Shown here piece after piece: positions 3,936-50,507 of a stretch of DNA of 64,000 nt. How positions within the stretch are numbered: the stretch's first letter is position 1; every line of letters begins with the position of its first letter. The translations under genes were made by a program, and so were the position numbers. The notes below the pieces were generated by a model that was given only the letters and a program-made list of their open reading frames with translations, was not told the origin of the DNA and ran no database searches. Source of the stretch: Malacoraja senta (taxonomy: Eukaryota); assembly GCA_038087875.1 (NCBI GenBank), contig CM075986.1, positions 16,864,001 through 16,928,000 of the forward strand, in the 5' to 3' direction.

Positions 3936-4993
3936 AATTGCACCATCAGATGGAATGTGTGAGCATAAAGGACTGGTTTTTTTTTTTTTAAATGTGTTGT
4001 CCTATGTTTCTCAACAGTGCAGAAATATCACGGATTAGTTTTGTTAGATTGCCTAATGGAGAGAATCAGACTTTAATATGCTGTTCTTTGACTCGCTGCA
4101 TTGATTTTTTTTCTTCTCTCAATGTGAATTTTGAAGTTAACCTGGAATTTCTTATCTTATAAACTTTAATTGGTTTATTATTGGAGATGGCTATTCTACT
4201 AGTTATGGGACAATTCCCAAATCTGGAACATAATTATTCCATGCCCCAAATGACTATTTAAGTATAGAGCCATACAGCATGAAACAGGCCCTTTGGCCCA
4301 ACTTGCCCATGCCAAGCAAGATGCCCCATCTACATTAGTCCCACCTGCCTGCGTTTGGCCCATATCACTCTAAACCTTTTCTATCCATGTATCTGTACAA
4401 ATGTTGTTTAAATGTTGCTATAGTACTTGCCTCAACTACCGTCCCATATACCCATCATCCTCTGTGTGGAAAAAGTTGCCTCTCAGGTTCCTATTAAATC
4501 TTTTCCCTCTCAATGTTAACTTGCGTCCCCGTCTTCCACATCCTCATTCAAATTGTTGATATAAACCACAAACAATAGGGCCCAGTACGCATCCCTGAGG
4601 CACACCACTAGTTACAGTACCCCAGTATGGAAAAACAACTTTCCAACATCACCTTCCTTCCATGAAGCCGATTCTCTATCCAGCTAGCTAGTTCTCCCTG
4701 GATCCCATGCATCTAACCTTCCAGGCAGCCGAGCATGTGAAACCTTATCAAATGCCTTGCGGAAGTTAGGTAAGTATCTTGGAAAGTTGCGCATGCCTTT
4801 TTTTAATGAGGTTTGGTCTGATCTGTTATTTAACTTTAACGTAATGTGCCATTGTGCTGTGGTTGAATTATCCAGTCAGGTGGTGTCCTCATTAATTTTA
4901 TTTGTTTGTGAGACAGGCTATCATGTTAGAGGTAATTGTTCTGCTAATTTAGATTAGACATGCTTTCGTGGTGGAACCAAACATCTAGACTTG

Positions 4994-5452: not shown

Positions 5453-7494
5453 GTAAGACCTTGTGAATTGAACTGTAAACATTGATTAGTTTTGAGCCAG
5501 GAATCTGGAAACTAATTAAAGAATTTGACGATTCCATGAAAGGGATATAATTTAGCTTGACTGTGATTGCCAGATATTTTGTATTGATAAGAGTACTATC
5601 AAATTGGTGTATTGTGGTGTAACACTAAGTTTATTGCACCATTACCCAAAGTTTTGAAACATTGACTTAAATAACCAAGTTCAAATTCTACCATTCACAG
5701 CTGGGAAATTTAAATCCAATCAATTATATAAATTTTGAATTCAAAACATGATAGATTTGTAGAGATGCAAGACACTGCAGGTGCTGAAATCCTAAGCAAA
5801 AGATGCGCTGCTAGAGGTATCAGTGGGTCAAGCAGCATATATGGAGGCAGATAGATAGCTGATGTTTCGAGTCAAGACCTTGCATCAGGTCATTGGGATA
5901 TATTTTTGGTAATTTAAGGAATATAGGAATTGTGCTGAGGTAACAGGTTAGCCACAGTCATATGACTTGGCAGGAGGTTGAATGGCCCGCTCCTATTTCT
6001 TTCTTTCTTGTGCTCTTAATAAAATATTCAATCTCACTTGTTATTTAATTCGCTAATATTTTAACTTCACTTCTTTTAATAGTTAACGGTAACAGATATT
6101 GGTAAATATTACAGAGTGTTCCTTGAAAAATGGGCTAATTGCAGTGCAGCTGGGATTTAATTACCGTAATAGGGATAAATGTCTATTCCATCCCCGAGGA
6201 TTTTGATGGTGTGGGCTTCGATATTCAATTTCAAATCTTAGTTTGCCTTGGTGATGGTAGTCACGCTTTGGAGAACAATCAAATTTAAACAAGTAGAAAA
6301 GAGTACACCTTGGCTGACTATTGAGGGAGAGGGATGTTTTGATTGATGATTTATTGTAAACTGCTTGTTAAAGCTTCTAATGAGATTTGAGACTCCTTGG
6401 TTTTGAAGGGGCGGTACCTGTGAAACTGATAAATACTATTCCCTCGGCCATAAAACAGAATTATTAATTGGCCAAATGCAGTGTTGGATTGAGTGGAGCC
6501 TATAGAATAGAGAGGGCACCTGAATTTGAGATGTATTTGAATAATTGTTATTTATAGTGTTTGAAATAAGAATTTGGCCTTCCAGTTTTGGCTTCACGTG
6601 GTTCAAGAGTCATGTAAATGAGGTGAATTCCTGGAAAAGGATGACAACATTGTCATTCATGGCAAACTAAATTTCCAGTCCTTACACAAAATTACTTTGC
6701 CTTGCACAACTTTTGTGTATGTATTTATCTTAGTTTTTTCTGCTCAACTCCCATTAACATTTTTTTTTAAATTTAGAATCCTGTATCTTACACAAATATG
6801 ATCAGAGACTTGTAAATTTGAGCAGATAAAGATATTAAAATGGACTATAGAAACAAACTAATAAGCATTACTATGAGGAGGCAGAGAAAACTATGAGGTT
6901 GCAGAATACAAGCACCTTGGTGCAATGGGGCTAGGGAATGGATTCCAGGTGTATGCAACCTTGAACGTGAGAATTGATTTGTAAGCCCAAAAATGCACAC
7001 CTGTTAGGTTAAAGCACCACAAGAATGAATTCCATATGTAGAATCTGAGGAGGAGTAAATTATAGGAAAATAATTAAATGGGCAGTTATAAGTAGCAGTT
7101 TGGGAATCTTATTGCATCAATCAAAGTTGGTTAACAAATGACATCTGGCTCTGCTGTTTTGATTTTTTTCCCCTCTCTCACTGATAATGGGAAGCCCTAA
7201 AATGTTAACTATCTTGTGGCATGGTGTTGGTTTCAATCCACATTTGCTGAATGTGCTGATCCCTTCACTGCTGTTACTCCATCTCGCTGCTCCCCCTATG
7301 CAAAAATTAGCCTTGGTTCAAGTGGGTTATGGTTGGAAAAATCTACCTAGATTATTGCAACTGGTCGCATTTCAGTAATGGTTGAATTTAATTGTGATTA
7401 ATTCAGCAAAATTGAGTTAAAATATGTGAGCTTGGCTATCATTTGCTACGCTCAGATGTTGTGTTCGCATAATTGTAAATATTTGTTCTTACAG

Positions 7495-45870: not shown

Positions 45871-45962
45871 TCAAAGCCTCTTCATCCATTCAAGAGATGG
45901 TCCAATTTTCTCACAAGGGTGGGATGGAATATCAGGCATATTGTCATCATCCCGTAAAGGAA
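45871..45962 (-). CDS. NDUFA3: NDUFA3 exon 4 (last)
   Basis: taacag| then [30 protein letters not shown]-stop (human [30 protein letters not shown]); total CDS 261 nt. Confidence 0.95.
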
Positions 45963-48296: not shown

Positions 48297-48374
48297 CTGG
48301 ATACTGTAGGGGTACAGCACGATTCATCTTTGTTTGGTAATGGGCAACGGGGCTCACCCATGGCAACATAAGAG
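48297..48374 (-). CDS. NDUFA3: NDUFA3 exon 3
   Basis: tttcag| ... g|gtgagt, 78 bp; ALMLPWVSPVAHYQTKMNRAVPLQYP (human [26 protein letters not shown]). Confidence 0.93.
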
Positions 48375-48776
48375 CTGAAACCAGAGCACATGGAGGTCAA
48401 ATCATTTTCCTCTCTCCCTCCTTCCCCTATCCTCCACACCAACTTCCCGTTTCCAAATGGTTTGGTCTGCCCGTCACCCCCAAACCACCTTCCTCCACAT
48501 CTTTCACCCCATGATCTTGCTCTTCTTTCTGACCCTTTTTATCTTCGTGTAGCCTCCCTTCCCTCCACCCTGTCCCCAGACTCCCTGCTCTCCTGCCCAC
48601 TCCCTCCCTCAACCCTCCTTTCCTCTACTCACTCCCTTACCCTGGCCCCTACCTCTTATCCTCCACCTGTTTCTCCCCAGCCCCTCTTCACCGCACCCTA
48701 ACCCCCACCCAACCGTGGCTCCTCTCTCCCTCCCTCCCTCCTCTATGTACCCCCACCTGACCTATCGTACACTCAC

Positions 48777-48851
48777 CGGCGATGCCGATGGCGAACGATG
48801 TCACGATCACCGGCTCCTTCGCCCAGGCGTTCTTCAGAAACGCCGCGATGT
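48777..48851 (-). CDS. NDUFA3: NDUFA3 exon 2
   Basis: ctcag| ... g|gtgagt, 75 bp; IAAFLKNAWAKEPVIVTSFAIGIA (human VGAFLKNAWDKEPVLVVSF). Confidence 0.95.
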
Positions 48852-49108
48852 CTGAGTGTTGGGGACGGAAACCATCAGACGGACCACAAACCGACCCACT
48901 CCATCCCCTCCCCTCCCCTCAAGACCAGAGCCCCCCCTCCCCTCCCCTCCAGCGCCAACCCCCGGAGCTGCGGTCCCCGAAGAAACCTCCTGCTCACATC
49001 GCAAAGACGCCGTCCCCACAGCCGACCTCAGGGCAATCTCCCCGCCGCCCTGTCACCGGGACCTCGGGCTGACCTCCCCGCCGCCCTCTCTCTCTCTCTC
49101 ACACTCAC

Positions 49109-49124
49109 TCCGCAGCGCCGCCAT
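49109..49124 (-). CDS. NDUFA3: NDUFA3 exon 1 (coding part)
   Basis: ggaagATGGCGGCGCTGCGGA|gtgagt = MAALR, phase 1, inside a CpG island. Confidence 0.88.
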
Positions 49125-49138
49125 CTTCCTGGACCGTG

Positions 49139-49591
49139 GTCCCGCCCCCAAGACGTCACCGCGTCACCCCGCTCCGAGCTTGTCCCGCCCCCAAGACGTC
49201 ACCGCGTCACCCCGCTCCGAGCTTGTCCCGCCCCCAAGACGTCATCGCGTCACCCCGCTCCGAGCTTGTCCCGCCCCCAAGACGTCACCGCGTCACCCCG
49301 CTCCGAGCTTGTCCCGTCCCCAGACGTCACCGCGTCACCCCGCTCCGAGCTTGTCCCGCCCCCAAGACGTCACCGCGTCACCCCGCTCCGAGCTTGTCCC
49401 GCCCCCAAGACGTCATCGCGTCACCCCGCTCCGAGCTTGTCCCGCCCCCAAGACGTCACCGCGTCACCCCGCTCCGAGCTTGTCCCGCCCCCAAGACGTC
49501 ATCGCGTCACCCCGCTCCGAGCTTGTCCCGCCCCCAAGACGTCACCGCGTCACCCCGCTCCGAGCTTGTCCCGTCCCCAGACGTCACCGCG
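49139..49591. repeat. 43-bp minisatellite, about 10.5 copies
   Basis: Unit gtcccgcccccaagacgtcaYcgcgtcaccccgctccgagctt; gacgtca at 49152, 49195, 49238, 49281, 49323, 49366, 49409, 49452, 49495, 49538, 49580. Confidence 0.97.
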
Positions 49592-49621
49592 CCGCGCCTC
49601 CACCGGAGGTCACCGCGCTTT

Positions 49622-49658
49622 CCCCGCCCCCGCCCCCGCCCCCGCCCCCGCCCCCGCC
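49622..49658. repeat. (CCCCCG)n microsatellite, about 6 copies
   Basis: Read directly; GGGGGC repeats on the - strand. Confidence 0.95.
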
Positions 49659-49680
49659 GTGCCCGACAGAGACACCAAGT

Positions 49681-50507
49681 GTTAAAGAAGGAACTGCAGA
49701 TGCTGGAAAATCGAAGGTAGACAAAAATGCTGGAGAAACTCAGCGGGTGCAGCAGCATCTATGGAGCGAAGGAAATAGGCAACGTTTCGGGCCGAAACCC
49801 TTCTTCAGACTGATAGGGGGTGGGGAGAAGAAAGGAAAAAAGGCAGAGGAGGAGCCCGAGGGCTGGGGGAGGGGAGGAGACAACCAGATGGCTGATGAAG
49901 GGGAGGGGACAGCAAGGGCTAGCAGAATTGGGAGAATTCAATGTTCAAGCCCCCAGGATGTAGACTGCCCAAGCGGAATATGAGGTGCATTTCCTCCAAT
50001 TTCCGGTGTTGCTCGCTGTGGCCATGGAGGAGACCCAGGACAGAGAGGTCAGATACGGAATGGGAGGGGGAGTTGAAGTGCTGAGGTCAGATTGGTTATT
50101 GCGGACCGAGCGGAGGTGTTCGACGAAACGATCGCCAAGCCTCCGCTTGGTTTCACCGATGTAGATCAGCTGACATCTAGAGCAGCGGATGCAATAGATG
50201 AGGTTGGAGGAGATGCAGGTGAACCTCTGTCGCACCTGGAACGACTGCTTGGGTCCTTGAATGGAATCGAGGGGGGAGGTGAAGGGACAAGTGTTGCATC
50301 TCTTGCGGTTGCAAGGGAAAGTACCCGGGGAGGGGGTGGTACGGGAGGGAAGGGAAGAATTGACAAGGGAGTTACGGAGGGAGCGGTCTTTGCGGAAGGC
50401 AGACATGGGGGGAGATGGGAAGATGTGGCGAGTGGTGGGGTCACGTTGGAGGTGGCGAAACTGACGGAGGATCACTTGTTGTATGTGACGGCTGGTGGGA
50501 TGAAAGG
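49681..50507 (-). mobile_element. 5'-truncated Penelope-like element (GIY-YIG endonuclease end plus terminal repeat)
   Basis: ORF contains FPCNRKRCNTC and CISSNLIYCIRCSRCQLIYIGETKRRLGDRFVEH (GIY-YIG); flanked by 13-bp direct repeat agagacaccaagt at 49668-49680 and 50508-50520. Confidence 0.9.
49781..49808 (-). ncRNA. Minimal hammerhead-ribozyme-like core in the Penelope terminal repeat
   Basis: CUGAAGA-A-GGGU(UUCG)GCCC-GAAAC-GUU; stem I is only about 2 bp. Confidence 0.6.

What the first reader, a model, noticed from the sequence alone, without database searches (positions are those of the whole stretch)
49139..49658. NDUFA3 proximal promoter is a tandem-amplified cassette of Sp1 and CRE-like sites
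Seen: about 10.5 near-perfect 43-bp units start 15 bp upstream of the NDUFA3 ATG. On the gene strand each unit has a GC box (GGGGCGGG), TGACGTCT (7/8 match to the CRE TGACGTCA) and a second half-site TGACGC. A (GGGGGC)6 tract follows, and a YY1-type AAGATGGCGGC overlaps the ATG. Established: Sp1, CREB/ATF and YY1 are typical regulators of nuclear-encoded OXPHOS genes. Inference: one promoter module was amplified about 10-fold, giving a VNTR that could tune expression of a complex I subunit by copy number.
Basis: partly seen in the sequence, partly recalled or inferred. Interest (0 to 1): 0.72.

Follow-up and report, generated by a model that had tools for sequence, protein, structure and literature searches.

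The report
Expanded CRE/GC-box repeat, skate NDUFA3 promoter
In this skate, a 43-bp piece of the promoter of the mitochondrial complex I gene NDUFA3, carrying a CRE-like site and a GC box, has grown from about three copies to eleven; this is a clear example of a known kind of promoter repeat, and its effect on expression is untested.

Summary
A 43-bp x 10.6 tandem array (49139-49591, 97% matches) ends 14 nt upstream of the NDUFA3 start codon on the minus strand. It sits inside the only large CpG island of the window.

All 11 units carry TGACGTCT, 10 carry TGACGC and 9 carry GGGGCGGG. A (GGGGGC)6 tract lies 30 nt further upstream, and AAGATGGCGGC overlaps the ATG.

Orthologous promoters support amplification:
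- Leucoraja has 2.4 copies of a 46-bp unit.
- Amblyraja has about 2 copies plus a distal element.
- Rhinoraja has its own degenerate array of about 7 copies.
- Sawfish has dispersed CREs and GC boxes.
- TGACGT at -34 is shared by all four skates. The GC box at -23 is shared by three of them and decayed in Rhinoraja.

The window's array is a mosaic of ancestral distal-type and middle/proximal-type elements. It was nearly doubled by one 257-bp (6-unit) block duplication, with 1 mismatch in 196 positions.

So roughly 3 ancestral modules became 11, recently. Three things remain unshown: the transcription start site, copy-number polymorphism, and any dosage effect on expression. The read data could not resolve the array interior, and no RNA run of this species was found.

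Verdict: a real, young promoter minisatellite made of conserved CRE/GC-box modules, and a new member of a known kind. Earlier notes of this scan report similar promoter arrays elsewhere in this genome.

The parts
49139..49591 (-). 43-bp x 10.6 tandem array. On the gene strand each unit reads AAGCTCGGAGCGGGG-TGACGCGG-TGACGTCT-TGGGGGCGGGAC. Unit order on the + strand is C C T C D C T C T C D, where T is the catcgcg variant that creates an upstream ATG, and D is the 42-bp variant whose GC box is GGGGACGGG.
   Evidence: TRF; unit table and shift analysis, where a shift of 257 bp gives 1 mismatch in 196 positions; motif positions at a 43-bp pitch
49125..49138 (-). 14-nt unique spacer (CACGGTCCAGGAAG on the gene strand) between the proximal unit and the ATG. 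It is conserved in all four skates and is the likely zone of transcription initiation (inferred).
   Evidence: Alignment A1; the start site was not measured
49117..49127 (-). YY1-type motif AAGATGGCGGC overlapping the start codon (ATG = 49124-49122)
   Evidence: Sequence; AAGATGGCG is present at the ATG in 5 of 6 batoid orthologues; YY1 sites in OXPHOS promoters lie within about 10 bp of the start site (PMC2268925)
49568..49621 (-). Ancestral distal element (GGTGACGTCTGGGGACGGGAC, identical to the D variant) plus a decayed further site (TGACCTCC here, TGACGTCC in Amblyraja)
   Evidence: Alignment A2; dissection
49622..49658 (-). (GGGGGC)6 tract on the gene strand, holding five overlapping GC-box cores. 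It is the only canonical G-quadruplex motif in the 600 bp upstream, and the orthologues have only GGCGGGGGCGG at this place.
   Evidence: TRF; G4 regular expression; orthologue sequences
49109..49124 (-). NDUFA3 exon 1, coding part (MAALR + 1 nt), with donor GTGAGT
48777..48851 (-). NDUFA3 exon 2
   Evidence: Pfam NADHdh_A3, E = 2.5e-8; the exon 2-exon 3 joint 48374/48777 is seen in an RNA contig of a related skate
48297..48374 (-). NDUFA3 exon 3
45871..45962 (-). NDUFA3 exon 4, coding part with the stop codon. The AATAAA signal is at 45801-45796.
   Evidence: Pfam, E = 1.3e-11
48601..49690 (.). CpG island around exon 1 and the array. CpG observed/expected is 0.84 on the gene-side flank, 1.32 in the array and 1.08 on the distal flank, against a window background of 0.36.
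49030..49087 (-). About 1.6 copies of a 36-bp intron-1 repeat. The same unit is expanded to 5.4 copies in Amblyraja.
49660..49810 (+). Very abundant short interspersed repeat that bounds the promoter upstream. Related copies lie at the orthologous place in the other skates.
   Evidence: Summed word depth of about 2e7 against about 32 for single-copy flanks; orthologue sequences

Best explanation
The array is a recent, lineage-specific minisatellite expansion of the proximal promoter module of NDUFA3.

Shown:
- The ancestral skate promoter had about three copies of a CRE-like TGACGT site directly followed by a GC box. These were a distal, a middle and a proximal copy, lying in front of a conserved AAGATGGCG element at the start codon.
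- In this species the distal and proximal copies lie 43 bp apart.
- The array contains both distal-type and middle/proximal-type units.
- A single 257-bp (6-unit) duplication roughly doubled a ~5-unit array to 11 units.

Inferred, on how the array arose: a short internal deletion brought the distal and proximal copies to the 43-bp spacing. These roughly 22-bp direct repeats then served as substrate for slippage or unequal exchange.

Inferred, on how it works:
- The array is part of an unmethylated, TATA-less CpG-island promoter.
- Transcription starts in or just after the proximal unit, positioned by the YY1-type element.
- The units act as a homotypic cluster of bZIP (CREB/ATF-type) and Sp/KLF sites.
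- The extra copies most likely add redundant or saturating activator occupancy rather than scaling output linearly.
For: The array is real and non-random.

Gene identity and structure are established.

Orthologues:
- Leucoraja has 46 bp x 2.4 copies.
- Amblyraja has about 2 units plus a distal element.
- Rhinoraja has an independent 27-bp x 7.4 degenerate array.
- The D variant is identical to the distal element of Leucoraja and Amblyraja, and the C core is identical to their middle unit.
- The proximal module and the spacer are conserved in four skates and partly in sawfish.

TGACGT sites are enriched in the 300 bp upstream in 5 of 6 species, with 0 of 1000 dinucleotide shuffles reaching the observed count. 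Sites lie at -34 in all four skates; the GC box at -23 is present in three of them.

The array is young. Units are 97-100% alike and the 257-bp blocks are 99.5% alike, whereas introns are 8-15% diverged from the other skates.

The region is a CpG island with no TATA motif.

PMC2268925 documents CREB, SP1 and YY1 sites in OXPHOS promoters, with YY1 at the start site. PMC8559717 documents tandem duplication at bound sites in germline-open chromatin as a source of homotypic clusters.
Against: No transcription start, chromatin, methylation, binding or expression data exist for this species in the tools. No RNA run of it was found.

All 11 CRE-like sites are 7 of 8 matches; none is the perfect palindrome.

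In the older Rhinoraja array 2 of about 9 TGACGTCT cores have decayed. Narcine has no TGACGT at all in the 600 bp upstream. So multiple copies are not strictly required.

Gnomon isoforms in Rhinoraja begin inside a repeat unit 63 nt upstream of the canonical ATG. Some transcription may therefore start within or above the repeats.

The copy number rests on the assembly alone.
Confidence: 0.55

Rival explanations
1. The array is a neutral by-product of a mutational hotspot. It is real and made of promoter sequence, but only the conserved proximal unit and the YY1-type element matter. The extra units are too young to have been tested by selection and have no copy-number-dependent effect.
For: The locus expands different repeats in different skates:
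- a 36-bp intron-1 unit x 5.4 in Amblyraja;
- a 27-bp array in Rhinoraja;
- G-rich or C-rich arrays in sawfish and Narcine.

The units are near-identical, so they are very young. Some sites in the older Rhinoraja array have decayed. Narcine lacks TGACGT sites altogether. Tandem duplication at bound sites in germline-open chromatin is a known mutational bias (PMC8559717).
Against: Every unit keeps the full CRE-like core, and 9 of 11 keep the GC box. Multiple TGACGT sites are retained in five of six species over long divergence. Extra intact consensus sites next to a core promoter are likely to be bound. This argues for occupancy, not for a fitness effect.
Confidence: 0.35
2. The array is mainly transcribed 5' UTR. 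Transcription starts upstream of it, and the repeat acts after transcription through a G-rich structure and three short upstream reading frames of 12 codons opened by the T-variant units.
For: Rhinoraja isoforms X1 and X2 start at an ATG inside a repeat unit. T-variant units create ATGs at 49502, 49416 and 49245, each opening the same 12-codon frame. G-rich skew on the sense strand runs through the array into intron 1.
Against: The YY1-type motif overlapping the ATG and the conserved 14-nt spacer point to a very short leader; YY1 sites lie at or just downstream of start sites (PMC2268925; PMC8384218). A 500-nt, 72% GC leader would be unusual for an abundant housekeeping mRNA. A highly repeated element lies directly upstream of the array, leaving little room for another promoter.
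Confidence: 0.07
3. The copy number is an assembly artefact. The promoter has a few units, and the assembler inflated or mis-joined them.
Against: The variant units form an ordered higher-order pattern with a clean 257-bp periodicity. The proximal junction is exact in an independent contig. Homologous arrays of other sizes exist in three other skate assemblies.
Confidence: 0.07

Closest known systems
Human ALOX5 promoter Sp1/EGR1 GGGCGG tandem repeat, with related Sp1-bearing promoter VNTRs such as XRCC5 and the 61-bp SLC19A1 repeat
   Same: These are tandemly repeated GC boxes in a TATA-less proximal promoter. The (GGGGGC)6 tract here has the same motif as the ALOX5 CGGGGG/CCCCCG repeat cited in PMC3566118.
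   Different: Those are polymorphisms within one species with measured associations. Here the unit is a 43-bp composite of a CRE-like site and a GC box, only between-species variation is shown, and no expression data exist.
TYMS 28-bp enhancer repeat (2R/3R) just upstream of the start codon (from general knowledge, not checked here)
   Same: It is a minisatellite lying directly in front of the ATG of a housekeeping gene. Each unit carries an activator site, and copy number is reported to change output.
   Different: TYMS has 2-3 units carrying USF E-boxes inside the 5' UTR. Here there are 11 units with bZIP and Sp motifs, and the position relative to the start site is unknown.
Homotypic clusters of transcription-factor sites generated by tandem duplication in germline-open chromatin (PMC8559717; Gotea et al. 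2010 as cited there)
   Same: An existing bound site is duplicated in tandem, which enlarges a cluster of like sites in a promoter.
   Different: The human events described are 5-20-bp insertions. Here whole 43-bp composite modules were duplicated, and then a 257-bp block.
Viral enhancer and promoter repeats: HTLV-1 21-bp repeats (imperfect CRE flanked by G/C-rich runs) and SV40 21-bp GC-box repeats (from memory, a lead only)
   Same: Repeated short modules combine an imperfect CRE core or GC boxes to build a strong promoter.
   Different: There is no sequence relationship and no viral origin; the units derive from the gene's own ancestral promoter.
Other promoter arrays noted in this same skate genome by this scan (MHC class II beta Y-box x58, CD59, FLVCR1, a meiotic gene)
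   Same: Tandem multiplication of a promoter module directly upstream of a gene.
   Different: The genes and motifs differ. These are unchecked notes that I did not test.

Membership tests
NDUFA3 gene (Pfam PF14987 NADHdh_A3) | Protein matches the family profile above the curated cutoff | tested here: met
   Exon 2 scores 34.6 bits and exon 4 scores 45.1 bits against a cutoff of 27. The 86-aa product is 93% identical to skate NDUFA3.
NDUFA3 gene (Pfam PF14987 NADHdh_A3) | Intact spliced reading frame | tested here: met
   Four exons have GT-AG borders and an open frame. The exon 2-3 joint is seen in RNA of a related skate.
Promoter minisatellite / VNTR carrying transcription-factor sites | Head-to-tail units of 10-100 bp in several copies | tested here: met
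   43 bp x 10.6 copies, 97% matches
Promoter minisatellite / VNTR carrying transcription-factor sites | Lies in the proximal promoter or 5' UTR | tested here: inconclusive
   It ends 14 nt before the ATG and sits inside the CpG island. The start site itself could not be mapped.
Promoter minisatellite / VNTR carrying transcription-factor sites | Copy number varies among individuals | tested here: inconclusive
   Contigs of two samples (X1, X2) do not resolve the array interior. Copy number does differ between species: 2.4, about 2, about 7 and 10.6.
Promoter minisatellite / VNTR carrying transcription-factor sites | Copy number changes expression | not testable with these tools
   Needs reporter assays or allele-specific expression
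cAMP response element (CRE) | Palindrome TGACGTCA, or at least the half-site TGACG | tested here: inconclusive
   There are no perfect palindromes in the window. There are 11 copies of TGACGTCT (7 of 8) and 21 half-sites. Perfect CREs exist in Leucoraja (1) and sawfish (2).
cAMP response element (CRE) | Conserved in orthologous promoters | tested here: met
   TGACGT lies at -34 in all four skates. Sites are enriched in 5 of 6 species against shuffles.
cAMP response element (CRE) | Bound by CREB/ATF and responsive to cAMP | not testable with these tools
   Needs ChIP or EMSA and forskolin reporter assays
TATA-less CpG-island promoter with a YY1 element at the start site | GC at least 0.55 and CpG observed/expected at least 0.65 over more than 500 bp; no TATA box | tested here: met
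   48601-49900 has GC 0.66 and observed/expected 0.95, against a window background of 0.36. There is no TATAAA in the 600 bp upstream.
TATA-less CpG-island promoter with a YY1 element at the start site | AAGATGGCGGC core close to the start site | tested here: inconclusive
   The motif is present and conserved at the ATG. Its distance to the start site is unknown.
Transposon-derived or genome-wide satellite | Unit found at other places, or unrelated to the local ancestral sequence | tested here: not met
   There is no copy elsewhere in the window. The units align base for base with the orthologous promoter elements of other skates.

The most novel reading that the evidence does not exclude
Tandem arrays of GC-box or CRE modules sit in front of NDUFA3 in all five batoids examined, each with a different unit. 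Several other promoters of this skate genome were also noted as arrays. This could reflect a general mode of promoter evolution in batoids, in which bound promoter modules are repeatedly amplified and decay. One possible driver is meiotic recombination directed at CpG-island promoters: PRDM9 in the cartilaginous fish examined (elephant shark, whale shark) appears partial (PMC5519329).
Probability: 0.15. Interest if true: 0.65.

Novelty: new member of a known kind. Interest (0 to 1): 0.36.

Why it matters
This locus gives a datable, step-by-step example of how a cluster of like transcription-factor sites is built from a gene's own promoter. The steps are about three ancestral modules, then a 43-bp repeat, then a 257-bp block duplication. 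Natural comparators with 2, 3, about 7 and 11 copies exist in related skates.

If copy number affects output, it would be a natural allelic series for a complex I subunit. If it does not, it is a clean case of mutational bias shaping promoter architecture. Either way the locus is a convenient test bed, but the phenomenon itself is well known.

Tried and rejected
- **Start-site mapping from public RNA.** No RNA run of the window's species turned up. Run X24, from the same study, held only the flanking repeat. RNA of a related skate (X20) confirmed the exon 2-3 splice but gave nothing at exon 1.
- **More outgroups.** Stingray, manta and white shark loci came back without DNA.
- **Rfam scan of 48-52 kb.** Only a chance hit appeared (E = 0.17).
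- **Transposon or satellite origin of the unit.** Rejected.
- **Bidirectional promoter.** Rejected. The upstream neighbour, a CCCH/RING zinc-finger gene, is co-oriented, and in the orthologous loci it ends about 2.4-2.8 kb upstream.
- **Xi et al. 2007 on YY1.** The paper is not held, so it is cited only through PMC8384218.
- **NDUFA3 promoter literature.** The search gave nothing specific.

Full report
**What is there**

Reading 48700-50100 and running TRF confirm a 43-bp tandem array at 49139-49591, with 10.6 copies, 97% matches and no indels. A (CCCCGC)6.2 tract lies at 49622-49658. It is the only sizeable tandem repeat in the 64-kb window. A 30-nt unit probe matches nowhere else, with 9 hits against 0 expected.

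The gene next to it is NDUFA3 on the minus strand.
- Exon 2 (48777-48851) and the coding part of exon 4 (45871-45962) hit Pfam NADHdh_A3 above its cutoff.
- Exon 3 is 48297-48374.
- The four GT-AG exons give an 86-aa product. It is 93% identical to skate NDUFA3 proteins but identical to none of them, so the window comes from a further skate species.
- An RNA contig from a related skate shows the exon 2-exon 3 joint at exactly these coordinates.
- The ATG is at 49124-49122, and 14 nt separate it from the array.

On the gene strand TGACGTCT occurs in 11 of 11 units, TGACGC in 10 of 11 and GGGGCGGG in 9 of 11. AAGATGGCGGC overlaps the ATG.

The region 48601-49900 is the only large CpG island of the window. 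Its GC is 0.66 and its CpG observed/expected is 0.95, against a background of 0.36. The non-repeat flanks of the array also retain CpG, at 0.84 and 1.08. This argues for a germline-unmethylated promoter.

**Orthologous promoters**

Using the NDUFA3 proteins of other batoids, I fetched the loci of Leucoraja erinacea (L001), Amblyraja radiata (L002), Pristis pectinata (L003), Narcine bancroftii (L004) and Rhinoraja longicauda (L005).

| Species | Repeat in front of NDUFA3 |
|---|---|
| Leucoraja | 46-bp unit x 2.4, directly before the ATG, plus a distal element |
| Amblyraja | one such unit, the proximal copy and the distal element |
| Rhinoraja | its own degenerate 27-bp x 7.4 array (76% matches), made of TGACGTCT, GGGGAGCGGGG and TGACGCG |
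| Sawfish | no CRE array, but two perfect TGACGTCA, further TGACGT sites and GC boxes within 150 bp of the ATG, plus a G-rich GC-box repeat further upstream |
| Narcine | no TGACGT site, but a 20-bp x 13 C-rich GC-box array |

TGACGT at -34 is positionally conserved in the four skates. The GC box at -23 is conserved in three of them and has decayed in Rhinoraja (GAGGCGGGAC). The spacer and the AAGATGGCG element are conserved as well. TGACGT sites in the 300 bp upstream exceed all 1000 dinucleotide shuffles in five of the six species.

**How the array was built**

Alignment A2 shows two matches.
- The D-variant unit (TCT-GGGGACGGGAC) is identical to the distal element of Leucoraja and Amblyraja, and to the window's own distal flank.
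- The core of the common unit is identical to their middle unit.

The 43-bp unit differs from the 46-bp unit in two ways. It lacks about 11 nt (AGACGTCCAGG) and it includes the doubled TGACGCGG-TGACGT of the proximal copy. This is consistent with a deletion that placed two roughly 22-bp direct repeats 43 bp apart, followed by slippage or unequal exchange. That step is an inference.

The order of variants is C C T C D C T C T C D. A shift of 257 bp (six units) gives 1 mismatch in 196 positions, against 88% identity at a shift of 43. So the last event was one block duplication that about doubled a five-unit array.

Intron and exon DNA is 8-10% diverged from Leucoraja and Amblyraja and 15% from Rhinoraja. 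The expansion is therefore much younger than these splits, unless the array has been homogenised.

**How it probably works**

None of this is measured. CREB, SP1 and YY1 sites are the recurrent conserved elements of OXPHOS promoters, and YY1 sites sit within about 10 bp of the start site (PMC2268925). The YY1 motif is over-represented just downstream of human start sites (PMC8384218).

With a YY1-type motif on the ATG, no TATA box and a conserved 14-nt spacer, the most likely start zone is the proximal unit or the spacer. The array would then be upstream promoter, acting as a homotypic cluster of bZIP and Sp/KLF sites.

Two observations temper this reading.
- Rhinoraja Gnomon isoforms X1 and X2 begin at an ATG inside a repeat unit 63 nt upstream, so some initiation within the repeats is possible.
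- The T-variant units would add three 12-codon upstream reading frames if they are transcribed.

**Selection or mutational bias**

Arrays recur at this promoter in all five batoids, each with a different unit. A different 36-bp intron-1 repeat has expanded in Amblyraja. Two TGACGTCT cores have decayed in the older Rhinoraja array. These facts fit a locus prone to tandem duplication.

Such duplication is known for bound sites in germline-open chromatin (PMC8559717). The same facts also fit turnover under selection for a cluster of sites. The data do not separate the two readings.

**Limits of the read data**

- A short-read contig of the best-holding run matches 48427-49168 without mismatches, which confirms the proximal junction.
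- Nothing spans the array.
- No RNA of this species was available.

Copy number, polymorphism and start site therefore remain open.

**Comparison and verdict**

The closest known things are:
- promoter VNTRs with Sp1 sites, such as the ALOX5 CGGGGG repeat and XRCC5 (PMC3566118);
- the TYMS repeat in front of its ATG (from general knowledge);
- homotypic site clusters made by tandem duplication.

The finding is a real and well-resolved new member of that kind. Earlier notes of this scan list similar arrays at other promoters of this genome. Cartilaginous fish appear to have only a partial PRDM9 (PMC5519329). Together these allow the speculative broader reading given in the section on the most novel reading.

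Noticed in passing
window 49660-49810 (and beyond to about 50050): The short interspersed repeat directly upstream of the promoter has a summed contig word depth of about 2e7, against about 32 for the single-copy flanks. It is therefore one of the most abundant repeats of the genome.
   Followed up: partly
L002:6032-6225 (Amblyraja intron 1); window 49030-49087: A 36-bp G-rich intron-1 unit is present in about 1.6 copies in the window and about 2 in Leucoraja, but is expanded to 5.4 copies (98% matches) in Amblyraja. This is a second, independent minisatellite at the same 5' region.
   Followed up: partly
L001:5747-5772 and 5825-5850; L002:5879-5904: A 26-bp palindromic insert (CAAAGATC...GATCTTTG) interrupts the promoter repeats in Leucoraja (two copies, the first with variant inner bases) and Amblyraja (one copy). 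It is absent in the window and in Rhinoraja. It looks like a tiny hairpin element or a footprint.
   Followed up: no
L005:6001-6170 (Rhinoraja longicauda): The annotated isoforms X1 and X2 (118 and 120 aa) start with MTSWGRGDAVTS. This is the translation of a promoter repeat unit, followed by exon 1 read out of frame and part of intron 1. It is probably a minor or artefactual model, but it hints at transcripts that begin inside the repeats.
   Followed up: partly
L004:3421-3677 and L003:3674-3779, 4051-4400: Narcine has a 20-bp x 13 C-rich GC-box array, and sawfish has 21-32-bp G-rich GC-box repeats upstream of NDUFA3. Sawfish also has a long poly-purine G-rich array in intron 1.
   Followed up: partly
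L001 and L002 flanks; window below about 43000 and above about 52000: The gene order is conserved among batoids: a co-oriented CCCH/RING zinc-finger gene (makorin-like by its domains) upstream, then NDUFA3, then a convergent ANAPC3/TPR gene downstream.
   Followed up: no
window 49245, 49416, 49502: The C-to-T unit variant (catcgcg) creates an upstream ATG in three units, and each opens the same 12-codon frame (MTSWGRDKLGAG). This matters only if the array is transcribed.
   Followed up: partly
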